From positions 106,950,001 to 107,014,000 of the forward strand of contig OZ320314.1 in the NCBI GenBank assembly GCA_976226885.1: a stretch of 64,000 nt of DNA, given 5' to 3'. Made by a program: the position numbers and the translations under genes. Positions 4,389-64,000 of this stretch are shown one piece after another; positions within the stretch are counted from its first letter, which is position 1, and every line of letters starts with the position of its first letter. The notes under the pieces are model-generated. The model saw nothing but the letters and a program-made list of their open reading frames with translations, was not told the origin of the DNA and did no database searches. Origin of the DNA: Iphione sp. A-MEVVRFRX5 (lineage: Eukaryota).

Positions 4389-4438
4389 ATATATTATCTC
4401 TGTAAAGGACACAAGAGGTGGTGGGCTTAGAAGACTCC
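4389..4438 (-). repeat. Element 1 terminal repeat B2 (50 bp)
   Basis: Identical to 4608-4657. Confidence 0.95.
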
Positions 4439-4462
4439 TTTATTAAGAAAAAGGAAAAAGAA

Positions 4463-4657
4463 AAAATTTTAACAGCTGTGACGGTTATGAACAGATGGTA
4501 ACGTCATACAAGAACATTGTTGTCTTGGTGCTGTGGTTACCTTAGTATCATCTCCAAGGGAATCAACAGATATACATATATTATTATAAATATACTATTT
4601 ATAATCCATATATTATCTCTGTAAAGGACACAAGAGGTGGTGGGCTTAGAAGACTCC
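4463..4657 (-). repeat. Element 1 internal B1-A2 junction (A2 about 4463-4609, B1 4608-4657)
   Basis: A2 matches 8480-8626 and B1 matches 4389-4438; they overlap by AT at 4608-4609. Confidence 0.95.
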
Positions 4658-4666
4658 AAACCCCAA

Positions 4667-5683
4667 CTAAGGGTCAGAAAATAAGTTAGCATCACAGTCA
4701 AGCATAGAGTTAACATCAAACTCTAGATAATCATAAATACTTTTGGATTTCCAATCACCACAAAATCTCAACTCCTGCAAAGACACACCATGCTTAGAGA
4801 GAAAAGTTGCACCACCTCGTCTAAACGAATGTGATGATACTCCGACTAGGCCACAGGCCAAACACGCACTTCTTAATCTGTCTCTAAAGGTGTTATAAGT
4901 TAAACATTTAACATTTTTACCTTTCCTAAACGAAAAAATCAAATCGCTAGGTATAGGCTCGCACAAAATTTTCCATGCCTTGAGCCAAGTGACTACACAC
5001 ATGGCCTTACAACCACAAAAAGATAAAGGCACACATACCTCTCTCCCACTACCGCCGAGGGTCTTACCCCTGCAAATCCTCACCAAAGCTCCTCTTTTTA
5101 CAAACTTAACGTCCTCCCACCTCAGACCCCGGGGCGTGGTGTATAACTCCTTTCTCAAAAGGCAACGATAGGCCAAACTACAGGCCAACCAAATAATTCG
5201 GTCCCAAACAACATCCATTGAAAAACAACTAAACAGCGCTAACATATCATCAAGAGTCAAAGCCAGTGCTCGTTTAACTGGTCTGCTGTTCATACGCTTA
5301 ATACCTTTAAGAACTTCTTGTACATAAAAGTTCTTCTCATAATTAAGACTGTAACCTCTTGACTTGCAGTTGAAAACAAGCGCAGACAGATAATTCCTCA
5401 CCGAAGAATAACACATTTTCCTTGCTAAAAATGTGAGGTACATGCATAAATTAATCATACTACAAGGTAGCAGGGAAACACCTATGGAATTACAGAAGTT
5501 CCTATATGACTCCCACTGCGTACATCTCGCCTTCTTAGTGTTCTCTGCAGCTGAATTCTCCATCAATTTGGACATCTCCTTCAGCAGTGCCTCTCTCTCT
5601 CCTGCAAAGACATTGAAGGACTTCGCTACAACAACAAAAACTTCCCCATGGTGAATCGCATAGCTTTTCCAATATATTAACAT
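4667..5683 (-). CDS. Element 1 tyrosine recombinase (intact frame; true coding start may be the splice acceptor at 5601)
   Basis: Catalytic-type motifs CLLRK, RGKT, SHSFRRGGAT, GDW and IYDY. The ORF overlaps the RNase H end in the +1 frame. Confidence 0.93.
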   Translation of the reverse strand: MLIYWKSYAIHHGEVFVVVAKSFNVFAGEREALLKEMSKLMENSAAENTKKARCTQWESYRNFCNSIGVSLLPCSMINLCMYLTFLARKMCYSSVRNYLSALVFNCKSRGYSLNYEKNFYVQEVLKGIKRMNSRPVKRALALTLDDMLALFSCFSMDVVWDRIIWLACSLAYRCLLRKELYTTPRGLRWEDVKFVKRGALVRICRGKTLGGSGREVCVPLSFCGCKAMCVVTWLKAWKILCEPIPSDLIFSFRKGKNVKCLTYNTFRDRLRSACLACGLVGVSSHSFRRGGATFLSKHGVSLQELRFCGDWKSKSIYDYLEFDVNSMLDCDANLFSDP

Positions 5684-7592
5684 CGTACAATCTAGAGAGA
5701 CTATCAGCTATTACATTCTCTTTACTTGGTATATAATCAACAACAAATTGTATGTTAAATATACATGCTGTCCAAAAAATTTCTTTTAACCATCTCTGAC
5801 AACATCTATCTCTACTCCGCCCAGTTTTAAGCATATAAAGGACGCACATATTATCAGTGATGAGACGTACTGTACAATTTTTTAAAAGATGACACCATCT
5901 TTTGAGTGCAATAACTACAGGCCATAATTCAAATACGTTAATGTGCCTTTTATATTCGTCCTGACTGGGAACATCTTCATAGTGGCCAACCAAAATGTCT
6001 CGGGGGATGTTACAATTCTCCCACTCTCCAATGAACCAGTCATCGCACATATATCCACCAAACATACCTAATGATGAATCAGTAGTTATACATTCTGTTG
6101 GCTCTCTCGGATTAACAATTTTTCTTTTACCATTGAAAATGTTTATGAAAACTTGCCACCATTTAATTTCACTCATTACAGCTTCATCTAATTCTTTTTT
6201 CATTTTATAATTTACAAAAGAGTTAGTGAACTCATACAAACTCCTCGTAAACGTGCGACCACCTTTCACCACTGTCGAACAATGAGCAAGCAAACCGGTA
6301 AGCTTTTCCATATCCTTCTTACACACTTTCTTTGCTGACAACACATGGTTTATCTTCACTTTTGTTTCTTCCACTTTGCTCAAAGGAAGTCTCAACTCAA
6401 GCATACTTGAATCAATTTCAATACCCAGAAATTTACAAATAGTGTTAGGTTCAGTTACTTTTTTGATTGAAACATCAAAACCAAAGTTACTTATTACTTT
6501 CATCATAACTTCCTTATAAAAGTCACATTCATCATAGCTTTTACCCACAACAATAAAGTCATCCAGGTAATTTACAGAAAAACCACCGCATTGACATTCA
6601 AATTCCCCTTTGATTACATCTGAGATTACAGAAAAAATATAAGGTGCACATTTCAATCCAAAACATAGCTAATTGTTAATGAAGTATTCTTTACCTTTCC
6701 CTAAATCCCAAGAGAAACCTTGAAATTCTCTATGCCCGGGATACACTTGGACACTGCGATAAGCATTCTTTATGTCAACTACCGACATAAATTCATCACC
6801 TTCCAGAGCATAAGCAACATCATCAACAGAATTGTACTTAAACGCATGGTGGGTAGAAGACATAAAATTGTTAATACTGCTGCCCTCAGGCATAGAACAA
6901 TCAGTTATCGGACGGAGTGATCCATCACTTTTCTCTACTCCACCCATAGCGTTTACACATCTAGGTTTTGACTCACATCGAGAAATAAAACCCTGATCAA
7001 GCTCAGTAATTAATTTTTCTGTCATCTGTTCAGAAAAATCATCTGTGAGAATAGATAAGTAGTTATTACAGTCATAGGAAGTATTACATTCTTCATCAAC
7101 AATTCTGAAGCCTTGAGTAACACCAGACCAAACTAATCTTATTTTTTCTTCACATAACTGGCTGCAACACAACGCAAATAACCAGCGGCACGGCTTCAAC
7201 TTGCATTCTACACCACCTATAGCATAGTTACAAGCACAACTACCTAGGATACATTCCCGGTACTCACGAATGATGGCATCACCATCTTCATCCTTGCCAG
7301 TTACCACGTAATTTTCTAGCATGCCTTCCTCTACTGAAATCAGATTCCTAAGGCATGACTCAAACATTTTCATACGATAGAAAACAACATCTTTTTCATG
7401 GGGGTGCTCTGCGTAGCTCTCATCATGACCTATCGTCACTATGCTCTCCTCGGTTGAGCAACTACTATTGTCCGCATCCAGAAGCTCAACATCGTCAACA
7501 TTATCTGTAGATAGAACAAATCTATTATTCAGTTCAATCACAAATACCTCGTTGTTGTATCTCGAAGACTTCTCAGCGGATGAAGCACACCG
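5535..7592 (-). pseudogene. pol: Element 1 pol (RT-RNase H) with one in-frame TAG at 6669-6671
   Basis: Motifs KSDGSLRPITDCS, DIKNAYR, FGLKCAP, NYLDDF, FLGIEIDS, TDSS, INVFELWPV, TDN and NVIADSLSR. ORFs 6669-7541 and 5535-6656 are in the same frame. Confidence 0.92.
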
Positions 7593-8452
7593 TCAATGTT
7601 GTTTTGACGTCGTCTTCATCTTCCTCGACTCGTCTCCATCTACCGGTTTAGAAGCAAAACACTCGTACGCTCTATGTCCGCCAGAGCTGCAATTCAAACA
7701 CTTATGCTGATAAATACAACTACTGTCGCTGCATTCGCCTGCATTATATTTGAAGCAAATTTTTTCTCCCTTCCACGACTTCTTCGAGGTCTTGTTCTTC
7801 GCAAACCCTGTCGTTGCATCCACACCCATATATTTATGGATCGCTTCGGTGTCGCCGTAGCTAAACGCACTCGTTCCTTGATGTGCTGCCCTTCTTCTCA
7901 ATTCTGCATCATAGCTCACCAACGACTTGATACTGTAGACACGAGTCGAGGCTTTTGTGGCCAGGAAGGACAAGTGCTCCACGTAAGACGAGACATCCTT
8001 CTTCTTCTTAATCATCTTCTGCAGTAGGCCTAATGACCCAACCATTAGGTGCTCGAAGCTCGAGATGCTGTCTTCATCTGTATAACGGATAATATCATAC
8101 TTCTTCACCCTCTTACCCTGTTTCTTTTCTTCTTCCTCTCTAGCCTCTTCTTCACCTCAGCATCTTCAAAATCCGAATCGGAAAAATCGTCTTCATCACT
8201 GCTAGAGGAAGAAACCGAGGAAACACTTCTAGAAGGTGACTTTCTCTTCTCTTTCTGCTTGTCGCCTTTGCTGTTCACCAATGCCTCCATCAGCGACTCC
8301 AACCTCAACAAACGGCCCTTAACGTCATCTCTTGGATTATCTGGCTGCTTATCAGCATCACAATGTCCATCAACGTCATCTTGAGGTAACGAGCAACCTT
8401 TTCCAACTGGAGGCGGATGGTTGACTTTACATCTCTTGCAGTATTTACCCAT
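7593..8452 (-). pseudogene. gag: Element 1 gag-like ORF1 with one frameshift near 8120-8135
   Basis: N-terminal CxxCxxxH-x7-C (CKRCKVNHPPPVGKGC) and C-terminal CCCH+CCHC fingers (CFKYNAGECSDSSCIYQHKCLNCSSGGHRAYEC). It aligns with the continuous gag of element 2 if one A is restored in an A-rich run. Confidence 0.85.
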
Positions 8453-8479
8453 CGTGGCATCAATACGTGTGTCGTCAAC

Positions 8480-8626
8480 AAAATTTTAACAGCTGTGACG
8501 GTTATGAACAGATGGTAACGTCATACAAGAACATTGTTGTCTTGGTGCTGTGGTTACCTTAGTATCATCTCCAAGGGAATCAACAGATATACATATATTA
8601 TTATAAATATACTATTTATAATCCAT
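8480..8626 (-). repeat. Element 1 5' repeat A1 (147 bp)
   Basis: Identical to about 4463-4609; TATAAA on the minus strand at 8615-8620. Confidence 0.95.
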
Positions 8627-11347
8627 GTATACGACGTTTGTAAACCATTTATTTCTCCCTCATTCTTGTCTCCTCCTCCTCCGTTTGTTGCAATTATCTC
8701 CTATTATTTTACGTACCATAAGTAGTTATGTTTCGTTGTTGTCCCTTAGCGGGTTGTAGTTTCTTCCTTTCACCCATCTTGCTTCTACGTTGAAACCTAC
8801 AGCTAAGGATAGGACGTGGACCAGTTAATGGTTTCCTGAGCAGGGAAAATACCAATGAAGTAGTCATCTGTAATATATTTAGCGCCAAACTAAAGCTATA
8901 GAACAATTCACTAAACACAACTTTACGCCATTAGGCTGTTTACTGTTCGTGGAAGATTTCCTGTAAAAAGACGTCATTTTTACCAGGAATCAGTGGTAAA
9001 ACGTTACAAGGCTGCAACCACCTTGCGAATTAATGTAGAAAGACAAGCTATAGCTCATCTTCTTCCTTAGATCCTTTAGTTTCATATGAAGTTTGTTGCG
9101 TGAAAATCGGGCAATTAAGAGTCGTGTTCTTTGCTTGAGAAGGCAGTTTTCCTTAGCGTTTTACACATGACAGCCAGCAGAACGTAAACACTGTCGTCGG
9201 TTGACCTATGTCATTCACATAATCTCATTGGTTGCCACTAAGTTGTGGTATCATATCGACGTTGGTTAATCAAAATTGGACTAGCCTCCCAGAGATGCAG
9301 TCCAGCTGAAACAAAACACGATCAGGCACACACGTGGAAATACCAATATATTTGTCTCATATGGATTAATTTATAATGCCTCGTTGAATGAGTGTGCATT
9401 GGGAACTATTGCTAGTGGTTATTCCAGCAATATTTGATGACTAGTACCTTAAGAGGTGCCTCCGCAGAGAGGCGATCGCTAGGAAAATCCCGACTTTAAA
9501 GCAAAAAAGTCAAAAGATTACCTCATTAAAATCTGGTCTAAATTCACAAAATAAATCGATAGATCAACTGTTTCATCAACTAGATTTGTACGTAGGTTGT
9601 TTATGGGGGAAGAATATCAAAGATTCCGATGGGAATGAGACTGAAATGGAAACGACTACGGTTCAAGTTGACAAAAAGACAAAATGTTCTATGTGATAAA
9701 AGACTAAAAACCGACATAGTATCATTCCAAAAAGGAGCCATCTCAGCCCTTAACCTGATTCTATAAATGTGCACTGATAAACCAACGATTTTCTGGATCT
9801 ACCTAACATTTTACCTTGTTATGTGTTTCAAACCTAACCCTTTCTCTAGAGACATCTTGTTAATGATGGCATATTTCTCTCGGTGATGCTCCATCCAAAC
9901 CACTTGGTGAATATGTGTAAGTTAGGCTGAGAGAGAATGTCAACAGTTCATCAAAAAATAAGTCCGACCCAAAACATGTCGCTAACCTTAAGTGTACTGG
10001 GTGTCCGTTTAGTCAAAGACATTCATTCCCGTTTAAGTATCTGATGGTTAACCCTTCTTCACACCCTCACCCCCTACGACCACCCACCCCCCTGTCAGGG
10101 GGAGGGGAGACTGTGTCGTCACTGGATGGGTGGGTGGGAGCCGCGATACGTGCACTGTCGTCGGGATTTGCTTCACCTACAGATCCGCAGCAACTAGTGT
10201 TGGCGCTTACATGACTAGCTTAAATGGAAAAAAACCTAGTATCTGGTATCTCTACTTATGATACTTTGTCCCGGTAGTTCTGTCTTCACATTAGTTGGTA
10301 TATTTTATTGGTAACACTTGGTATCTTTATCCATTGCAGGTAGAAAAATTAATTTACCTTCATCAATTTTGCCGAAAAAAACACAAACGATTAATATCTT
10401 TATTATGGTACAAACTCAGAATTATGATCAACCTTTGGAGCAAGTAATTTTGCCATCTACACTGAGCTTCCCTGCTACCTATATTGGTTGTGGTATAAAA
10501 GATAAACCATTGGGACCAGTCGAATATATGAATTGAATACAAACTCATGAAGGTAGCCCTTGCACCATCCTGGTGGAAGAAAACTACGGGGAGTCTTCAT
10601 TTCACACATCAAAAAAACGCATTCAACAAAAGATATTCACGTACGCCCCGCACCGATGGAAGCAGTTCTGGGCACTCACATTGGCCATATTTCCTCACAA
10701 TCATGCACCAACATGCATGCCACTCATGGAAACATCGCTTTGCTTTGAGTACAAACTCACTTCTTGGTAATGCACACTTTCAGTGTGCAATACAGCAAGC
10801 TATAAGAATGACAAGTATTCAACAAGTACACAGTAAAACCGCACCATCCAGGTTTAGTAGAAAGCTAATCATACCATTTACTTTTGACATCCGACCAAGC
10901 GGCAAGAAAACAGCTGCATAAATGGACGATGCCAGAAGAAAGCCACTTGCTTGAGCTTAGTTGTTGTCTATTAAATTTTCAGCAACCAACAATTGATACA
11001 TTGCCATGTGACATGTTAAAATGATGTACGCCCATAATACCTGTCAATCAAAATGGTATTTGGCCAATGATGCAGTGTAGTCAATATCACATGTCACAAA
11101 TGTCCAACAACATTTCAGACAACATTTCATTGACGTCGTCACTCATATGTGCCAGGTTTTGTCTTGAATGGAAACACATCAGTTCTCCTGTGAAAAGAAT
11201 ACAGAACTGTGATGTTTCTGAGTAGAATTTTTTTTCTATTTTAACATTCTTTGTGACCATGTTAAAATTATGATTATCACAAGTCATTAATTATGCGATT
11301 ATGTCTATATGTAGATATATATCTATTGGAACATTGTAATGAATCAA

Positions 11348-12039: not shown

Positions 12040-14640
12040 GCTTGTTTGATTTTGACGGAGCATGATATACTATGCGAGCAGCTCAATTCGGAGAAGTTTT
12101 GTTGTAAATGTGACAAAAAAACACGTCTCTCCAGCCAGTAGAAAATATAGAAGAGTATCCTCTATACCTGATGAGGCAGTTAAATCAAAGAAACTGATTT
12201 TTCAGACGATTAAGAGGTGAACAAGCGATTTGAAAATAAAACAAGTGCATGCTGAAGGTTTTGATGTTGACGAGGGCTGATACAAGTTTGGTGCCCGTGA
12301 AGAAGACTACAGATGCAGATGAGTGCTCTACCAATGATAGTTTGTCATCCTCAGATGATGGTTTTGGTATAGTGGATGATGACTGTCAGATGTCATAGTA
12401 TTGTAAAAATTATAACTCTAATTTGAATGGCGAATCTAAGAAACAAATGAGTCGAAAAATAGAGTCTGAGGTGATGGAAGGTTTATTACTGAATGTAAGG
12501 AAAAGCCTCATGGTGTGAATGCTTTTTGGGGGGGGGTCCCAAAAGGTGATGGAAGCCTGCATCCTATAACGGACTGTTCTATGCCCCAAAACATTTTGAT
12601 TAACAATTTTATGAACATTACTCACCAAGAGATTAGGTATCATTCAATTGATGATGCAAGTAATGTACTAGAGTTAGGTGACTGGACGAGCACATGTGAC
12701 ATTAAGAGTGCCTACCGTTCTGTCGTGCTAAACCCTAATTATCATCAATTTCATGGTTTCAGTTGAGAAGGCACAGATAGTATATATATATTTTATGTGA
12801 ACAATACATTATGTTTAGGTTTAAACATCTTCAATGAAATCTCTGAATTTATTGTATCAGAGCTCAGGCATAGGTGTGACGGTTTAGTAATTAACTACCT
12901 AGATGATTTTATTGTGATAGCTAGTACTGAAAATAAATATGATGACATGCAACATGCATTGAAAGAAGTTATCAGTGATGTTGGTTTCACAGTGTGTCCC
13001 ACCTACGAGACAATGTTAATTTTTAGGTATCGTAGTAGATTCAGCTGAGATGGAGTTATCCCTCCCTAAAGGGAAAGTAGTGAGTGTGAAGTGTAAAATC
13101 AAGGAGGCCATTGAGAAGGGAAAGTTAAGGAAAAAGGAGTTTGAAAGTTTGACCCACTCCCCGTCACACTGTGTTTCTGTAGTAAAAGGAGGCCAAAGTC
13201 ACACAAGGAATCTATAATGTGATGAAAGAGTTGAAAGGAAGTAAAGAAACTGTAACCATTAATGAAGAAGTTATTGGGGATTTGAAGTGGTGGTTAAAAT
13301 TTATCAGTATTTTCAATAGTAAGAAGTGTATAATCAAAACCAGGGCAGTCTCAACTGTAACTGACTCTTCCTTAAAAGGGTTTGGTAGGTGGTTTGACAG
13401 AAACTGGTATTATGGAAAATAGGACAGTGAGATTTGACTTATTGATTGACCATCACCTCGAGACTCCACCTACTTTTGATGTATTTGACAAATACATTAA
13501 TAATTCTGAACTTTGGGTTGTCATGCTAGCGCTAAAAATATACTAAGATAGTGCTCTTCCCTGTGGATAATTAATAATCAGTATTATATATGCTGAGAAT
13601 GAGTAGAAGTAGAAATAGGCCTTGTATGAGAGGGCTTTGTGAAATTTTCTGGTGCTGTGTCCTGAGGAACATTGTTTTCAAAGTAGAATATATTTCTTCT
13701 GAGAGCAACTACATAGCTGATGCCATCTCAAGGGCCTATGATATACAGATTGTTAAAAGACTGTTGGATGATCTTTGGATCTGTCATGCATGCTGTGGAT
13801 ATAAAATCAAATTTATTTGCAGAGAAACTCTGGTGTCTGAAAAACGAGACGTCCATGCTGAAAGAGGAAGCCACATCAAGTGACACGAAATAATGCAGGA
13901 AACTTCAATTACAGTGATAATCAGATGATGCTCTTCCCTTGTAGATCATATTATGATCTGATCAGTTTTCCATGCTCATCATTTCAAGCTGAACTTAATT
14001 CAACGTATCTTTGCAGGGGGATGTGTTATAGCTCAATTACAACTACCTGTCTGGTCTTATTTATGGGTGTTTTGAAGTTATTTCACCAAGTTATGACGAT
14101 TTCAGTATTTCTCAAATTTTATCCGGTTTAAAAAGGTGTACTGATAGAAAACTTGTTTGTGCTCATGCCTTGACCCTGTTGCATTTAAAAATAATTATTG
14201 ATATCTCATTCTGACGTATTGGACCAGTTTTGCTGGTTAGCATGTATTGTTGTCTTCCGTTGTTTATTAAGGAAACAGATTTTCACCTCAAGTGATGGCT
14301 TGAGGTAGGGTGATTTTGAATTTTGCGATTTGAATGTAAACACCTATGTATGCAGAGGAAAATGTGTATCTTCTTCTTTGTAAATCTTATCAATTTTGTG
14401 TTGTGTCTTGGCTAAAAACTTGGCAAGTGAGACACCATTTGAGTGATGATCAACTTTTCTCATGTATCACTATTTTCTCATGTACACAATGGTAAAACTT
14501 TGGTCGTTGGTATATTTGCCTACAATTCATAGCAACCTCCTTATACAGTGGAACTAGAGCTCATAGTGGAGGCACAGTGAGTATAGTATGTGCTTCGCAG
14601 TTCAAATGGTAGTATATTATTCTTAGATAAGAGTTCACGA
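12040..14640 (+). mobile_element. Element 3: decayed, internally deleted Ngaro-type YR retrotransposon
   Basis: Remnants occur in order: gag start (KFCCKCDKK/HVSP), RT (PKGDGSLHPITDCS, DIKSAYR, NYLDDF), RNase H (TDSS, NYIADAISR) and YR (CYSS, WLAC..FRCLLRK, CVVSWLKTW, AHS-GG). Many stops and frameshifts; no 3' repeats found. Confidence 0.88.
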
Positions 14641-29930: not shown

Positions 29931-31770
29931 GTTATATTGAAAAATGTTGTCTTAACTTTAGTTAAACTTCAGAGAAATTATTTGCTTGAAAATATTCCAT
30001 TTATGAACCAAGGTTGTAAAAGGTTAAGTAAAACCACTTCACTAGTTGTACCAAAAACAATGTCTTTCATTGTTAGTGAATTGTCCGTGTATTAGCCTAA
30101 AACGGTGGAACAATCTACAAAAAAAACAAAGCCAAGGTCATGCTAAGATAGTTCAGAAAATGTATTCAGTTTTGATTATTTATGTTTCTTATGTTTCTTG
30201 TTTCTTTTGCATTAATTCTGTATTATTTCTATAAATGTGTGTAAAAGCGTAACAAAAATAGATAAAAAATGGTTTGATTTATGACATGTAAATATGCTTT
30301 GTAACTTCTACATAATCAGTAAGCAACCACATTTGGTCACATACAAAACAGTCTGTTTGTTAGTAATGAGCTGGACTAACATTTTCCTTCATACATCGCA
30401 TGTTGAATCTATTGTTTTCTCTTGTTTTTTTCTCAGTCTTATTCAGAAGAACATTTACCCTTATTTTAAAAGATATCTGAGATAAAATAAGACTGTCACT
30501 GCAGCCAGACCGGCGCACATAGACAAGGTGTTTTTGGGGTCATTTGATTAAGTTGGGTTTTCTATCTTAACTGTAAAATTATTGAGCGGTAATTTTACGT
30601 AGTGATCACCAGTATTCTATAACTTAAGGATCCAAAACATTAAACCAAATTAACATTATAATAATAGATTTTTAATTGCAGTTAATTCCATTAGTAGTGT
30701 TAGATTATGCAGTATGAAGTCTTATAAATTCTTTTCCTGAACACATTTTGCTATTCTTTCCTGATTATATTAACTATGTCCATCTCATCTCATATCATTT
30801 CCAAGAACTGTGTTGATACCCAAGCTGGTTACAAAACATACATTGTATACTGATCCAGTGAAAATAAAGATTAAAAAAAAAGACTTAACACTCTTCTTCT
30901 TACTATTATTATTTTATATGTGTTATTTTGGATGGAGATCCATATAACAATGCATTTGTACTGTCCCTACTGACAGTTTACTGAAATAACTGCATATATA
31001 ATCAGATAAAATATCTTACTATATCTTTTTTTACCGAATGTGATTTAATAATTTTGCCTTTGAATCTATCAATTACCTTTGTAATAGGATGAAAGGAACG
31101 TTTGCTGGAATATTTGCTTCATCTACTCTCTGACCACAGTCTTGAGCCCTTTTATCCTCAGGCATAAAAAAAGGAATGTGATTCCATTAACATTTTGAAA
31201 AATCATAATGTCAGTGAGTCGGTGTTTTTTTTCTCTCACAGGAATTATAAAGTTAAAAGCCTACACATCACCTACTTATCATATTACCACCACTTCTCTT
31301 GCTTGGATCTTAATGACACATATATCAATATGAATGCTAGAAATCAAAGGAAATATTTTGATACATTGTATAAATCTGTAGCTATATCCAGTCCACAAAT
31401 ATAGGCAAAAATATTATAAAACAAAAAAGTCCAATAGGCCAAATATAGGGTCAGTCGGGTTACTGGAAACAGATTTTTTTTATCAGGCCTTGGGAGACGT
31501 TCATCCTGAACTAATGTGCAGGAGGACATTGGCTGCCCTGGGTAGGCCATACAATCAGACTGTACCATCCTTCGTCCCTGATTTGTTTATCTATGAGAAA
31601 TGAACTGATTATTTTCGTATTGATATATGAGTGAATTTGCTAATCACCCCTACCAAGGTGGCACACCGTGTTTAAAACTGTTTTATAATGTTCCCATTTG
31701 GTTATAATGCAAACAACCATTTTAAGACGTTTTATTATTGTTTCTTCTAACATTTATAACAGGAAGACAG

Positions 31771-31985
31771 CCAAGGGTGGGGGCAAAACTTAAGAGATCC
31801 GGGGACTTCTGAAATGGACAAGAGGTTGGTCAAGGGTGGGGGCAAAACTTTAGAGATCCGGGGACTTCTGAGATGGACAAGAGGTTGGTCAAGGTTGGGT
31901 AAGCACTTGTAGAGGTGTGGGGACTTTCGAAGGCGACAGGAGTATGGCCAAGGACAGGGGTAGCACCTGTAGAGGTGAGGGAATG
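31771..31985. repeat. GC-rich minisatellite, unit about 59 bp, about 3.5 copies
   Basis: CCGGGGACTTCTGA recurs at 31799 and 31858; later copies diverge. Confidence 0.8.
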
Positions 31986-32418: not shown

Positions 32419-33228
32419 TTTACAACCCTCAGTTCTGCTTGACTGAACACAGGGGTGTAGGAATACACCTAACTGAAAAGGTAGTCCCAAGTAGCACACT
32501 TTTTCATTTTCTTTGTTTAGTTTTTTGTGTATGGGACATCATATATCATTCTATATCATTTTAAAAAGTATGACCAGAAATATATGAAAAATAAACAAAT
32601 TATATGACTTTAAAAACATCTCACAACAATGAGACCTCCTCCCCATGGCCAGACTACTTTCGAGCAACGTTTTATAGGGGTAGTGTAAAAAGTAACTGAA
32701 TTAACTGCCAAGGTAAGCAGGATTCTACATTCTGTTTGAAGTGAAAATACATGCAGATAAACAGTATTGTACTATTGAAACATCTTAACTTCTTAGTGAT
32801 TGATAAATTTGAATCAACATAAGCATTGTATATCTATAATATAATCTTAACCAAAATGCTAATTATCTCGATGTCTTTGCGTGAATAAAACTAACATTGT
32901 GTCTTGTATAGGAATGTACCCCTTTGTCCCGCAGGTGCCACTAAAGCCCTAGTCGGCGTGTTGTTACACTACCTATATAAAACGTTGCTTGAAAGTAGTT
33001 CGGCCATGGGGAGAGGTATCATTGTGGTGTGATTTTCCAGATTTACCTTATTTTTGATGCTGATTGATCCATGAGGATATTTTAAAGCATGACAGAGATA
33101 GTTATTCACCTTTAGTGTATGTAAAATGCTTATTACTAAAAACATATGACATATGTAGCCCTACTTTCTACACAGAGTGCTGTATTCCTACCCCCTCTGT
33201 TCAGTCAAGCAGAACCAAGAGTTGTAAA
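32419..33228. repeat. About 49-bp imperfect inverted repeat pair 0.7 kb apart (possible non-autonomous DNA transposon)
   Basis: 32419-32467 is the reverse complement of 33181-33228 with a few mismatches. CTGTACTTTGACCCCT also occurs directly repeated near 32363 and 33242. Confidence 0.6.
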
Positions 33229-36438: not shown

Positions 36439-36493
36439 ATATTGAAGGAACGTGACAAACACACAAATTGGGGGTTTACACACAATTTCTGGC
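36439..36493 (-). repeat. Element 2 terminal repeat B2 (55 bp)
   Basis: Identical to 36667-36721. Confidence 0.95.
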
Positions 36494-36513
36494 TTTATTC
36501 ACTTCACAAAGAA

Positions 36514-36721
36514 AAAATTTTGAAGCAAAGTGGCGGTTGGTACTAAAGACATTCCATTCTACATGGGACGTCATCACAGAGCTAAGCATATTGCTGATGT
36601 TGGTAGGGTTACTGGAATACAGCATAATGGTTCCCAAGCAATATCCACATAAATACTTTATATGGCATATTGAAGGAACGTGACAAACACACAAATTGGG
36701 GGTTTACACACAATTTCTGGC
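36514..36721 (-). repeat. Element 2 internal B1-A2 junction
   Basis: A2 36514-36670 and B1 36667-36721 overlap by ATAT. Confidence 0.95.
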
Positions 36722-37688
36722 CAACCCCAAGGAGGAAGAAAAAACATAATCCTGCTTAAAAAGCTGTTCATCAACACATCTAATGTAAGAGTAAACAGCA
36801 TCACTCTTCCAACCACCCCTGTCCCTTATAGCATGAAGAGGTAGACCAATCCGAGCCATATGTGAAGCACCAGCCCGTGTGAGGTAACTCTCCCAATAAC
36901 TCCCCCTAGCTTGCTATAATGCTTAAGTGAAGCTTGAACCTCTCGTACTCAAAGAGACAAATAACACCTCTCTTCGAATATGAAAAAATTGGATCACATG
37001 ACACAACCTTAGTCAAGGAAAAAACCAAATTAAGCCAATACAATAAGCAAAACCTTTTATCACTACATTCAGAAATAACCAACTTCCTTGGATTCTCCCC
37101 AAACTCGTCAGTCTTCGACCTACGAATCATGACAGAAACTCTGTCACTACCTAAGACCACATCACTCCTCCTAATAACTGAATCGCCAGTATACTGACAC
37201 TTCCTAACTAGACATCTAAAACCAAGAACTACTGCACACCAAAACAGGTATGAATACAACTTTGAAAAATCCAAAACATCATAAATTCTAACTAGATCCT
37301 CCACTCGAAGGCCTTTAGAAACGTGGCTAGTAAAATATGCTGATCTCTTCAAACCAGCCACCATCCACCTAACAACAAAATCCTGTACATCAGGAAAGCT
37401 CATACCCTTACGTTTATGCTCATAAATCAAACCACTCAAGTAATTCGACACTGAAACTGGTGCCATAGAAAAAGACAAATATGCACAATATCTTCTGAAC
37501 TGTAGTTGACTACATGGAAAGGCCACTAAGTTGTACTTTTTACAAAAACCTCTATAAACTTGCAGTTGCCTCTCCCTTGTCCTGATGGTGTTGACAGAGA
37601 AAGCAGACGACTTGAGAGACTCAATCCGATCATCCAAACATCTAATCCGACCTGAAATCAAAGAGACACTCCTTACAACAGGCCTCAT
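36704..37688 (-). pseudogene. Element 2 tyrosine recombinase, disrupted near its 3' end
   Basis: Open to 36906 (FRCLVRK, RRSKTD), then a frameshift. VTSHG has lost the LRR of the HxxR motif with a second shift; GGWKSDAVYSY follows and the frame ends inside B1. Confidence 0.9.
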
Positions 37689-39588
37689 CCAACCATTCGG
37701 TCCATCTCACATCATCACATCTAATTATTCCATCAAATCTAGACAAGCTATCTGCTACAATATTATCCTTGGTATTCACATACTCACAAACCAATTTGAC
37801 ATTGTGCACCATGCATGACCAGAAAACCTCTTTCAACCACCACATACATCTCAGGTTTACACTTCTCCCCGTCCTAAGCATATACATAACTTAAGTGTTA
37901 TCGACCATAAACAACACTACTGAACCTCTCCACATCTGGCCCCATCTCTTCAGAGATATCACCACTGGCCATAGCTCCATCACATTGATGTTCTCATCGA
38001 CATCCTCCATTGAAGGCTTTTGTTCCAGATGACCACAGCCAAGACCATCCAGAACATCAACCCACGAACCCAAGAACCAGTCCTTGCCACAAAAACCTGC
38101 AAAGCCTTTGAACGATGAATCCATGTAACACACAAATGTAGGGTCACTCAATTTCATGATTTTACCTTCCCCATTGAAGATCCTCGAGAATGACCTCCAC
38201 CAGCTCAAATCCTCCAAGACGAGGGCTTCCACCTTACATTTCCTGTTATTCCTTGGTAAATGCTCAACCTGATCATAGAGACTCCTGCTGAAAGTCCTAC
38301 CACCGCTTATTATTGTCGAGCAGTGAGCCAGATAACCTGAAAGCTTCTCTCCTTCCTTCCTAGACATTTTGCCACTCACTAGAACATCATCAAGCATATT
38401 ACCCAGCTTCTCTAATTTCCCTTCAGGCAGTCTCAGGCGCATACAGATAGAATCAATCTCAATACCTAGGAACACACAGCAAGTGCTCGGGACTGTAACC
38501 TTCTTCCAAGATACATCAAAGCCCAAGCCCTCAATGATGCCTGTCAACAGATCCCTATTACGTAAACAAGCTTCATACGTCTCTCCTACCACCAAAAAAT
38601 CATCTAAATAGTTCACAATACCTGCATCTGACACCCGCCTATAATTCTCCACTACAAAATCGGATATTTGCGTGAATATATAAGGGGCACACCTCAAGCC
38701 AAATGTAAGCGTGTTATTCTCGAAATGCTGCTTCACACCATCCAAAACCCAAGAAAAACCTTGGAAACTCCTACAACCTGGGAGAACCGATACTGAACGG
38801 TAAGCATCGCTTATGTCAACAACTGCCATATATGTGCCAGTCTCCAAAAACTCACACACATCCAAAACCGAGTTATAATTAAACTCTTTAAACAATCCTT
38901 CCATGAAATTATTGATAGAGATACCATCAGGCTTAGAACAATCTGTAATCGGTCTTAAAGACCCATCCGACTTGGCAACCCCACCCATAGCGTGCACACA
39001 CTGGGGGACATGGTCTACCCTCCTTACAAAGCCTTGAGCCATCTCACATCTAATTTTTTCCGACATTTCCCTTCGAAACTGGTCCGTATCCAATGACTTA
39101 TAGTTCTTACAATAGTATGAATTACAAAAATCATCATTAACAATTTTGAATCCACAACAGACACCGGACCAAATATATGATCTCATCTCTAGGCTCTTGA
39201 ACCCAAAAGCACAACCTTTGAAAAACCTGCATGGCAGCAATTTACATTTCACACCATCCAACATGTGACTACAGTTACATGAATTTAACATACATCTCTC
39301 ATAAATATCAATGACTGTAACACCATTGAATACCGAATATAACAGATCTTTCGCTACCTCAGCGGGGTAGGATATTGATGCTTCATTCACAACATCACGC
39401 CAATCAATCAACAACCACTCCATACTATCTGTTGCAATCTCATTGAAAATATCACCCAACATAGCATGGCGATCCTCAGTCTCATCCACAACCACATAGT
39501 AAGAGCATTCAACATGGTCAAAACTTGGGAAGACAAAAATCTTCCCCACGTTCACTGTATTGCACCCAACAGGCACAGTACCATCTAG
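37642..39588 (-). pseudogene. pol: Element 2 pol (RT-RNase H) with one in-frame TAA at 37891-37893
   Basis: Motifs KSDGSLRPITDCS, NYLDDF, MDSS and INVMELWPV. DNT*VMYML is probably CAA>TAA of DNTQV; NIVADSLSR follows in the same frame. Confidence 0.92.
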
Positions 39589-40536
39589 TCACTTCTTGCT
39601 CACTTTCGAATCCTTACTTTTATCCATATTGTTGACATTTGCGGGACACTCATAAGCCTTGTGTTCGACTGAACCACACACCAGACACATGTGTTTTAAG
39701 TTACATGAATGATCATGGCATGTACCATTGTTAAAGCGGTAGCAGACCTTATCTGATTTACGACCATCAAAAGCTTTCTTCGATTTAGTTTTCTGCTGGC
39801 CACTTCTGCTATTACCACCCGTCGTCTGAACCATCATATCAAAGCTAAAATGACTGCGAATTAAGTCATCATTGCCAAAAGTAAAATATGAAATACCTTT
39901 CATCTCGGCTTTCTTACGGATATCATGGTCATAATCAATGAACGATGCATCTTTATACATGTTTTTAACGCGTTTTTCAAGCATAAACAGGATGTGATCA
40001 AGGTAACCGGAAACACACTTGCCTCTCTTCAGGTGCTGCTGTACCAATTTGACCGATCCTAGCATCAATTCATCAAAATTACTAATTTTCTTAACTTTCG
40101 CCGCAGAAGTCACATTAAAGTCCTTCTTCTTACCACTTGACTTTTTCTTGCGACTCTTAACAGCAGAATCTTCATCCGAATCATCTTCTGACGAACTCTC
40201 ATCAGAACTCGATGATGAAATGCCAGGCTTCTCCTTGGAAACTGCATCATGTTGCCGCTCCCCAGACATTGATGAACTCTTATCACCATTCGATGCCAAA
40301 AACATCGCAAACATGTCTTCCAGACGGCCCATACGGGAAGACAAATCCTGGCTATCACCATTACCATTACCATTGTCAGCCGACAAACCACAACAAGTAC
40401 CATTCTCCTCAGAAACACCATTAAATTCAACGAAATCCTCCGATGGGCCCATATCGGCCACCTGGAAAGCCATACGACAATTCTTCCCAATGGGGGGGCT
40501 ATGCCTCCTTCTACACTTTGAACAATGTCTGCCCAT
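39589..40536 (-). CDS. gag: Element 2 gag-like ORF1 (intact; ATG at 40536)
   Basis: N-terminal CSKCRRRHSPPIGKNC, an acidic Ser-rich tract, and C-terminal CYRFNNGTCHDHSCNLKHMCLVCGSVEHKAYEC. Confidence 0.9.
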   Translation of the reverse strand: MGRHCSKCRRRHSPPIGKNCRMAFQVADMGPSEDFVEFNGVSEENGTCCGLSADNGNGNGDSQDLSSRMGRLEDMFAMFLASNGDKSSSMSGERQHDAVSKEKPGISSSSSDESSSEDDSDEDSAVKSRKKKSSGKKKDFNVTSAAKVKKISNFDELMLGSVKLVQQHLKRGKCVSGYLDHILFMLEKRVKNMYKDASFIDYDHDIRKKAEMKGISYFTFGNDDLIRSHFSFDMMVQTTGGNSRSGQQKTKSKKAFDGRKSDKVCYRFNNGTCHDHSCNLKHMCLVCGSVEHKAYECPANVNNMDKSKDSKVSKK

Positions 40537-40607
40537 CCTCGATAGCAAAGACACAATGCTCAGAAGAGGCTAACGAAGCACACAGCAAAGGTACGTGTTG
40601 ACTCGTC

Positions 40608-40764
40608 AAAATTTTGAAGCAAAGTGGCGGTTGGTACTAAAGACATTCCATTCTACATGGGACGTCATCACGGAGCTAAGCATATTGCTGATGTTGGTAG
40701 GGTTACTGGAATACAGCATAACGGTTCCCAAGCAATATCCACATAAATACTTTATATGGCATAT
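40608..40764 (-). repeat. Element 2 5' repeat A1 (157 bp)
   Basis: Matches 36514-36670 with two substitutions; TATAAA on the minus strand at 40751-40756. Confidence 0.95.
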
Positions 40765-63629: not shown

Positions 63630-64000
63630 CCTTACCAGGATGATTTCATATTAGTAACTCAATTACAAGGCTCTTCAGTTAGCCCACATGGCCACGAGTT
63701 AGTATGTGTTTTCTAACCAAATGTCCAAATTCTTGGGTATCGAGGTAGATTCGAATGCAATGGAGCATATGTTACCTGGGGGGAAGCTAAAAGGTGAGGG
63801 AGAAAGTGGCAAATGCCACAAATACGGGTAGTCTGACTAAGCATGAGTTTGAAAGCCTGCCCTGTTCGCTCCCGCACTACTCCACAGTTGTAAAAAGTGG
63901 TAGAACTTATACCGGAACCTTCTATGACATGTTGAAAGCGTTGGCTAGGCCACGTAAGCCTGTACCATTGAGTGATGATGTTCTCCAAGATTTCTGGCCT
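63630..64000 (+). mobile_element. Element 4: decayed Ngaro-type pol fragment running off the window end
   Basis: YQDDFILV, KFLGIEVDSNAMEHMLPGGKL, HYSTVVKSGRTYTGTFYD and LSDDVLQD align with the pol of elements 1 and 2. Confidence 0.8.

What the first reader, a model, noticed from the sequence alone, without database searches (positions are those of the whole stretch)
39585..39591. Element 2: an independent family has the same in-frame gag/pol junction with the canonical UGA-CUAG readthrough motif
Seen: AAG AAG UGA CUA GAU at 39591-39585, just after the zinc knuckle and in frame with pol, with 42 open codons before the first ATG. The flanking protein and nucleotide sequence is not alignable with element 1, yet both use UGA and both have a recognised leaky context. 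Established: UGA-CUAG is the best-known metazoan and Sindbis-type readthrough signal. Inference: two diverged families with two different known contexts point to selection rather than chance. Caveat: each element also carries an unrelated accidental nonsense codon.
Basis: partly seen in the sequence, partly recalled or inferred. Interest (0 to 1): 0.88.

Follow-up and report, generated by a model that had tools for sequence, protein, structure and literature searches.

The report
In-frame UGA between Ngaro gag and pol
A dead copy of a Ngaro-type jumping gene has its capsid-like gene and its reverse-transcriptase gene in one reading frame, separated by one leaky-looking stop codon; 15 related families share this layout, so the enzyme is probably made by occasional read-through of the stop, as in some retroviruses.

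Summary
On the minus strand, gag (CCHC knuckle) ends AAG AAG TGA CTA GAT. The TGA is at 39591-39589 and CTAG at 39588-85. It is in frame with a 565-codon RT/RNase H frame, and 42 codons precede the first ATG. The element is a Ngaro-type tyrosine-recombinase retrotransposon with split direct repeats. This copy is dead: pol carries a premature stop and the recombinase frame is broken.

I fetched relatives with 24-46% pol identity. All 16 evaluable families of the nearer clade, including both window elements, have one in-frame stop 6-23 residues after the knuckle. Eleven use UGA, five use UAG (each followed by G), none uses UAA. As a control, the pol/recombinase junction is out of frame in 12 of 12 families. 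In three families the first AUG lies within or after conserved pol sequence. One relative has Trp exactly where a related family (L002) has UGA.

Programmed readthrough producing Gag-Pol is therefore the best reading (about 0.6). The CUAG claim is weaker. CUA or CGG follows UGA only in the two window elements, in 0 of 9 other UGA families. No convincing 3' structure was found.

Other first-stage notes report the same UGA-CUAG junction in Ngaro copies elsewhere in this genome; I could not check them. No open paper I could search links Ngaro to readthrough.

The parts
40608..40764 (-). Terminal repeat A1 (5' end of element 2)
   Evidence: 157-nt direct repeat, 99% identical to 36514-36670
39592..40536 (-). 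gag-like ORF, 315 codons from its first ATG
   Evidence: Open frame with a CCHC knuckle and a basic tail. No Pfam hit.
39646..39687 (-). CX2CX4HX4C zinc knuckle of gag
   Evidence: Read directly from the sequence. It ends 18 residues before the stop.
39589..39591 (-). UGA, the gag terminator, in frame with pol
   Evidence: A stop occupies the homologous place in 15 other families.
39585..39588 (-). CUAG directly 3' of the UGA (type II / metazoan leaky context)
   Evidence: The context is defined in PMC3542737. It is not shared by other families.
39463..39588 (-). 42 open codons without ATG between the stop and the first in-frame ATG (39462-39460)
   Evidence: P(open by chance) is about 0.09 for this element alone.
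37894..39588 (-). pol frame (linker, Cys-rich N-terminal motif, RT, RNase H), 565 codons up to a premature stop
   Evidence: RVT_1 at residues 235-378 (window 38886-38455), E=1.8e-14. 375 relatives found.
37891..37893 (-). Premature TAA inside a conserved pol block (copy-specific damage)
   Evidence: One search compared with the alignment consensus
37645..37890 (-). Remainder of the pol frame after the premature stop
   Evidence: It aligns with the C-terminal conserved columns of alignment A1.
36906..37688 (-). Tyrosine-recombinase ORF fragment in a different frame; catalytic C-terminal part interrupted
   Evidence: 36% identity over 185 aa to the PF00589-bearing ORF of L067, E=9e-33. Stops follow.
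36667..36721 (-). Repeat B1
   Evidence: 55 nt, 100% identical to 36439-36493
36514..36670 (-). Repeat A2
36439..36493 (-). Repeat B2 (3' end of element 2)

Best explanation
Element 2 (window about 36439-40764, minus strand) is a Ngaro-type tyrosine-recombinase retrotransposon. Its gag and pol lie in one reading frame, separated by the genuine, inherited gag terminator UGA. On the full-length RNA most ribosomes would stop there and make Gag (315 aa, CCHC knuckle). A small fraction would decode UGA with a near-cognate tRNA and continue into the linker, RT and RNase H. That yields a Gag-Pol fusion at a fixed low ratio, as in gammaretroviruses. These elements have no protease, so the fusion probably acts uncleaved. 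In this family the leak is plausibly set by the UGA-CUAG context alone. Shown here: the anatomy; conservation of a single in-frame stop across 16 families; the contrast with the pol/YR junction; conserved pol residues upstream of the first AUG in three families; sense-codon variants at the stop position. Inferred: that ribosomes actually read through, at what rate, and that CUAG is the stimulator. This particular copy is dead, so the mechanism applies to its active progenitor.
For: Anatomy. In-frame single stop 6-23 residues after the knuckle in 16 of 16 evaluable families of the nearer clade: UGA x11, UAG x5, UAA x0. These families are spread over the pol tree. Their linkers range from about 45 to more than 180 codons and do not align, so many indels must have preserved the frame. 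Internal control: pol and YR are out of frame in 12 of 12 families, and pol-end stops are TAA 3, TAG 3, TGA 6. The open stretch between the stop and the first ATG, combined over 11 families, gives Fisher P=3.6e-6. In L059 the first Met is residue 180 but homology to pol begins at residue 95. In L003 and L022 the first Met (88, 93) lies inside the conserved RT N-terminus. So an AUG start downstream of gag cannot give a complete pol there. All five UAG stops are followed by G (P about 5e-4 at a G frequency of 0.22), and C follows UGA in 5 of 11. P0107 is a fused gag-pol ORF with Trp exactly where L002 has UGA. L014 has CAG where its relative L013 has UAG. Only 1 of 120 pol relatives carries the gag knuckle in the same called ORF. 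UGA-CUA and UGA-CGG are the defined type II readthrough contexts (PMC3542737); ONNV uses UGA CUA GAC (PMC13517186).
Against: There is no expression, ribosome-profiling or peptide evidence, and no sequencing run could be listed. The CUAG/CGG context is not conserved: 0 of 9 other UGA families have it, and five of those nine have A or G at +4. UGA itself is not clearly enriched over the pol-end control (11/16 versus 6/12). UAA avoidance is only marginal against that control (Fisher P about 0.07). No significant or conserved 3' structure was found: z is -1.6 to -3.3 for el2 depending on length, and it is not an outlier among windows of the element. Rfam gives nothing. El2 has an in-frame ATG at codon 43 with G at -3, so a separate pol start from a shorter RNA is possible for this family. 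For Tca2, an in-frame gag UGA did not give readthrough from the junction alone (PMC2194720). A more distant Ngaro clade has a spacer with stops in all frames between gag and pol, so other expression modes exist in the group. Many families come from one assembly (ERZ25767047), and phylogenetic non-independence weakens the simple probabilities.
Confidence: 0.62

Rival explanations
1. Pol is made independently of gag: from a subgenomic or spliced RNA, or by internal initiation at the first in-frame AUG (39462-39460). The in-frame arrangement would then have no role in translation.
For: El2 has an AUG 42 codons after the stop with G at -3. The Tca2 junction holds a promoter and does not drive readthrough by itself (PMC2194720). 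First-stage notes propose splicing for the recombinase in these same elements (untested). The distant clade has a gag-pol spacer closed in all frames, so it must use another route.
Against: It does not explain why gag and pol share a frame with exactly one stop in 16 of 16 families despite variable linkers, while pol/YR never do. It also does not explain why conserved pol sequence lies upstream of the first AUG in L059, L003 and L022.
Confidence: 0.2
2. Termination-reinitiation: ribosomes finish gag at UGA and restart nearby without scanning from the cap.
For: L001 has ATG immediately after its TGA (TGA ATG). L009 has Met at residue 3 of the pol frame.
Against: In el2 the next AUG is 42 codons away, and in L059, L061 and L066 it is 143-180 codons away. 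Reinitiation does not require a shared frame.
Confidence: 0.06
3. The stop is incidental: either a nonsense mutation in what was one gag-pol ORF, or an unselected historical arrangement in a decaying copy.
For: This copy is dead and carries another nonsense codon. Single-ORF YR elements exist (PMC6681497), and P0107 is a fused ORF.
Against: A stop occupies the same position in 16 families. Only 1 of 120 relatives is fused. The A repeats are 99% identical, so little time has passed for decay. Other first-stage notes report the same UGA-CUAG in further copies in this genome (unchecked).
Confidence: 0.05
4. UGA is recoded specifically (selenocysteine), or the host reads UGA as sense.
For: None beyond the codon identity.
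Against: No SECIS or any other Rfam match in the window or the element. UGA occurs once in frame, only at the junction. UGA also ends pol ORFs in relatives. Five families use UAG instead.
Confidence: 0.01

Closest known systems
Ngaro group of tyrosine-recombinase (DIRS-order) retrotransposons
   Same: gag-like ORF, RT/RNase H ORF and YR ORF in that order. Split direct repeats A1...B1-A2-B2. No protease, no DDE integrase, no methyltransferase hit (general description in PMC3783388 and PMC9210276).
   Different: The open papers I could search describe overlapping or frameshifted ORFs and do not mention an in-frame stop or readthrough. Here gag and pol share a frame with one stop. Goodwin and Poulter 2004, the founding paper, is not held, so prior mention cannot be excluded.
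Type II stop-codon readthrough (alphaviruses, tobraviruses, coltivirus: UGA-CGG / UGA-CUA)
   Same: UGA followed by CUA (element 2) or CGG (element 1). ONNV reads UGA CUA GAC and CTFV reads UGA CGG UGU, both close to the two elements here.
   Different: Type II sites usually have an extended stem-loop starting about 8 nt downstream. Here only a modest 10-bp hairpin starts there and folding z-scores are not exceptional. Related Ngaro families do not keep the CUA/CGG triplet.
Gammaretrovirus / epsilonretrovirus gag-pol readthrough (UAG-G plus pseudoknot or stem-loop)
   Same: The same logic: gag and pol in one frame, one leaky stop and a low Gag-Pol ratio. Five related Ngaro families use UAG-G.
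   Different: Element 2 uses UGA. No pseudoknot family matched. There is no protease to release RT from the fusion.
Candida albicans Tca2 (Ty1/copia) gag-UGA-pol
   Same: A retrotransposon with an in-frame UGA between gag and pol.
   Different: In Tca2 the junction alone did not give readthrough in yeast reporters, and a junction promoter was found (PMC2194720). This is a caution that the layout does not prove the mechanism.

Membership tests
Ngaro (YR retrotransposon) | Reverse transcriptase / RNase H ORF of the DIRS/Ngaro type | tested here: met
   RVT_1 E=1.8e-14. 375 relatives, whose neighbouring ORFs carry PF00589.
Ngaro (YR retrotransposon) | Tyrosine recombinase ORF downstream of pol | tested here: met
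   ORF 37688-36906 is 36% identical over 185 aa to the PF00589-bearing ORF of L067 (E=9e-33). The catalytic end is broken in this copy. Pfam alone gave no hit.
Ngaro (YR retrotransposon) | Split direct repeats A1 - internal - B1 A2 B2 | tested here: met
   A 157 nt at 99%, B 55 nt at 100%, in the order A1...B1-A2-B2
Ngaro (YR retrotransposon) | No methyltransferase domain (this distinguishes Ngaro from DIRS1-like elements) | tested here: met
   Only RVT_1 was found in pol by Pfam
Type II programmed readthrough site | UGA followed by CGG or CUA | tested here: met
   TGA CTA G at 39591-39585. Definition in PMC3542737.
Type II programmed readthrough site | Extended 3' stem-loop starting about 8 nt after the stop | tested here: inconclusive
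   A 10-bp hairpin starts 7 nt after the stop. z is -0.5 (60 nt), -3.3 (100 nt) and -1.75 (180 nt). It is not an outlier among 100 windows of the element. No close copies were available for covariation.
Type II programmed readthrough site | Measured readthrough product | not testable with these tools
   No sequencing runs were listed. A reporter assay or proteomics is needed.
Type II programmed readthrough site | Context conserved among relatives | tested here: not met
   0 of 9 other UGA families have CUA or CGG. Codons following the stop are AUG, AAG, CCU, CCA, CUG, ACG, GAU, GGA, GGG.
Gammaretrovirus-type readthrough (UAG-G + pseudoknot) | UAG followed by G and a compact pseudoknot | tested here: not met
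   Element 2 has UGA-C. No Rfam readthrough or pseudoknot family matched.
Selenocysteine recoding | SECIS element | tested here: not met
   No Rfam match at gathering score in the window, and none at E<=5 in the element

The most novel reading that the evidence does not exclude
Stop-codon readthrough is the ancestral, obligatory way of making polymerase in a broad Ngaro lineage. The elements lack a protease, so the functional enzyme would be an uncleaved Gag-RT fusion. Families have switched between UGA (often UGA-C) and UAG-G while always avoiding UAA. This would be a context-tuned recoding site evolving in a eukaryotic transposon, largely without a dedicated RNA structure.
Probability: 0.45. 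Interest if true: 0.6.

Novelty: new member of a known kind. Interest (0 to 1): 0.48.

Why it matters
Gag-Pol readthrough is textbook for gammaretroviruses and known or suspected for a few LTR retrotransposons. I found no open paper that links tyrosine-recombinase retrotransposons to it. If confirmed, it adds a whole retroelement order to the users of this recoding strategy. It also gives a set of natural junctions (UGA-CUAG, UGA-CGG, UGA-A/G, UAG-G) for testing how far sequence context alone sets readthrough in invertebrate or lower-vertebrate hosts. For annotators, it means Ngaro gag and pol should be modelled as one read-through unit, not as two genes or a pseudogene.

Tried and rejected
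1. Sequencing runs: the look-up of sequencing runs listed none. I therefore could not lay reads to count copies, look for transcripts or test splicing.
2. The first metagenome scan, with the single protein, found nothing. The alignment-based scan worked.
3. Close relatives: the nearest pol relative is only 46% identical. No within-family copies were available to test whether TGA-CTAG is shared, or to test covariation in the 3' hairpins.
4. 3' RNA structure: folding of 60, 100, 120 and 180 nt after the stop in 13 families gave no consistent signal. L061 (z=-6.6) and, more weakly, el2 stand out.
5. Rfam: nothing.
6. N-terminal linker homology: residues 1-85 after the stop are barely alignable between families, so protein conservation directly after the stop could not be used as evidence.
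7. UGA enrichment: not significant against the pol-end control.
8. L044 was dropped from the in-frame count. Its sister L042 has extra stops and the post-stop peptide looks non-coding.
9. L060, L062, L063, L010, L005, L008, L018, L020 and L032 were treated as not evaluable. They have indels, tandem-repeat insertions or extra stops; several still show a gag TGA.
10. Literature: Goodwin and Poulter 2004 is not held. Searches for Ngaro plus readthrough, read-through, stop codon or in-frame gave nothing relevant.

Full report
WHAT IS THERE

Read on the minus strand, window 39600-39580 is AGC AAG AAG TGA CTA GAT GGT. The TGA is at 39591-39589 and CTAG at 39588-39585. The frame upstream is a gag-like ORF. 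Its first ATG is at 40536, it runs 315 codons, and its CX2CX4HX4C zinc knuckle (39687-39646) ends 18 residues before the stop.

The same frame continues open for 565 codons (39588-37894). It contains a reverse-transcriptase domain (Pfam RVT_1, E=1.8e-14).

The element is bounded by split direct repeats in the order A1...B1-A2-B2:
- A is 157 nt, at 40764-40608 and 36670-36514, 99% identical.
- B is 55 nt, at 36721-36667 and 36493-36439, 100% identical.

A third ORF in another frame (37688-36906) is 36% identical over 185 residues to a PF00589-bearing ORF of a relative (E=9e-33). This is therefore a Ngaro-type tyrosine-recombinase retrotransposon.

The copy is dead. A TAA at 37893-37891 interrupts a pol block that is conserved in relatives. 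The recombinase frame is cut before its catalytic end.

Element 1 (about 4389-8630, minus strand) has CAT TGA CGG TGT at 7595-7590, likewise in frame. The two pol proteins are 47% identical and are sisters in the pol tree. They are related families, not independent inventions.

IS THE IN-FRAME STOP MORE THAN CHANCE?

For element 2 alone the case is weak. Being in frame (1/3) and open to the first ATG (0.089) gives about 0.03.

I therefore fetched relatives. These were 120 pol proteins at 38-46% identity, the DNA around 16 of them, and 55 metagenome loci at 24-46% identity. For each locus I walked upstream in the pol frame to the first stop. I then asked whether a gag knuckle lies in that same frame.

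In the nearer clade, every family whose junction is evaluable has one stop, 6-23 residues after the knuckle, in frame with pol.
- UGA in 11 families: el2 CUA, el1 CGG, L001 AUG, L002 AAG, L003 CCU, L006 CCA, L009 CUG, L012/L022 ACG, L058 GAU, L059 GGA, L066 GGG.
- UAG in 5 families, always followed by G: L061, L013, L017, L028, L067.
- UAA in none.

These families are scattered over the pol tree. Their linkers between the stop and the first conserved pol block range from about 45 to more than 180 codons and barely align. Many indels must therefore have preserved the frame.

The same elements give an internal control. The pol/recombinase junction is out of frame in 12 of 12 families, and pol ends in TAA 3, TAG 3, TGA 6.

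EVIDENCE THAT THE REGION AFTER THE STOP IS TRANSLATED FROM UPSTREAM

- In L059 the first Met of the pol frame is residue 180, but homology to element 2's pol begins at residue 95.
- In L003 and L022 the first Met (88, 93) lies inside the conserved RT N-terminus, which begins at 46 and 51. A start at the first AUG would lose conserved sequence in these families.
- Combining the probabilities of the ATG-less open stretches over 11 families gives Fisher P=3.6e-6.
- Two natural variants fit a read-through product. P0107 is a fused gag-pol ORF whose sequence aligns, ungapped, with L002's gag tail up to the last residue, then has Trp where L002 has UGA. L014 has CAG where its relative L013 has UAG.
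- Only 1 of 120 pol relatives carries the knuckle in the same called ORF.

WHAT IS NOT SUPPORTED

UGA-CUA and UGA-CGG are indeed the two type II contexts (Firth and Brierley 2012, PMC3542737). ONNV and CTFV have nearly the same hexamers (PMC13517186). But these triplets occur only in the two window elements that prompted the finding. None of the nine other UGA families has them.

Weaker regularities do exist:
- No UAA (0/16 versus 3/12 at pol ends, Fisher P about 0.07).
- G after every UAG (5/5).
- C after UGA in 5 of 11 (P about 0.05 at a C frequency of 0.2, by my own hand calculation; the scripted test used 5 of 10, P=0.033, before L066 was added).

UGA itself is not enriched over the control.

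I found no convincing downstream RNA structure. In element 2 a 10-bp hairpin starts 7 nt after the stop. Z-scores are -0.5, -3.3 and -1.75 for 60, 100 and 180 nt. The junction is not an outlier among 100 windows of the element. Rfam finds nothing, including no SECIS.

A more distant Ngaro clade (26-28% identity) has a spacer closed in all frames between gag's UGA and pol. Other expression modes therefore exist in the group.

MECHANISM

Most likely (about 0.6), the progenitor's full-length RNA yields Gag by termination at UGA. A minority Gag-Pol fusion arises by near-cognate decoding of UGA, with the CUAG context setting the leak. With no protease, the fusion would act uncleaved.

The layout and its conservation are shown. 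Readthrough itself is inferred.

The main rival (about 0.2) is separate pol expression from a shorter or spliced RNA. It is possible for element 2 because of the ATG at codon 43. It is made plausible by the Tca2 precedent, where an in-frame gag UGA did not read through from the junction alone (PMC2194720). However, it does not explain the universal shared frame.

Reinitiation, accidental decay and selenocysteine are minor rivals.

NOVELTY

Full-text searches of about 8 million open papers found none linking Ngaro with readthrough. Papers on Ngaro/DIRS structure speak of overlapping or frameshifted ORFs. The founding paper (Goodwin and Poulter 2004) is not held, so earlier mention cannot be excluded.

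I file this as a new member of a known kind: gag-pol stop-codon readthrough.

The scan has flagged the same UGA-CUAG Ngaro junction in at least ten other first-stage notes on other pieces of this genome. If correct, this means the motif is a family feature and not a mutation of this copy. I could not check those notes.

LIMITS

- No read or expression data were available.
- No within-family copies were available.
- Many relatives come from one assembly (ERZ25767047).
- Family counts rest on my own clustering by tree and junction sequence.
- The probabilities ignore shared ancestry except where the control junction is used.

Noticed in passing
window 12360-13537 (+): A third Ngaro-like RT fragment, 36-43% identical to element 2's pol and split over several frames. 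It is a degraded copy of another family.
   Followed up: no
window 63730-63994 (+): A short RT-like match at the window's end (30-58% identity to pol residues 373-461). It probably belongs to another retroelement running off the window.
   Followed up: no
window 32419-33228: Nested inverted repeats (53-nt arms at 89% with 269 nt between them; 37-nt arms at 89% with 736 nt between them). Looks like a foldback or MITE-like structure.
   Followed up: no
window 31759-31876: Two tandem copies of a 59-nt unit, 86% identical.
   Followed up: no
L059, L003, L006 pol ends; L001-L067 pol/YR junctions: The YR ORF is out of frame with pol in 12 of 12 families and usually overlaps it by 4-64 nt or starts 27-42 nt after it. 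Three pol ORFs end in TGA/TAG followed by CTAC. How YR is expressed is open; first-stage notes suggest splicing.
   Followed up: partly
L061 3869-3971: The 100 nt after this family's in-frame UAG-G fold far better than shuffles (z=-6.6, -45 kcal/mol). This is a candidate 3' stimulator of the retroviral type.
   Followed up: no
L021, L024, L034, L035, L042 (ERZ17400xx loci): In a distant Ngaro clade, gag ends (mostly in UGA) and is followed by an AT-rich spacer of about 70-130 codons, closed in all three frames, before an intact pol. This implies an intron or separate initiation.
   Followed up: partly
L062, L063, L010 between gag and pol: Tandem-repeat insertions lie between the gag stop and pol.
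   Followed up: no
pol residues ~99-120 of element 2 (window ~39292-39229) and all relatives: A conserved Cys/His-rich block (C..C.C.H...KPCR; invariant P119 and C120) lies upstream of the RT domain. It has no Pfam assignment.
   Followed up: no
P0107 residue 423; L014 vs L013: Sense codons sit at the stop position in single copies: Trp where L002 has UGA, and CAG where L013 has UAG.
   Followed up: yes
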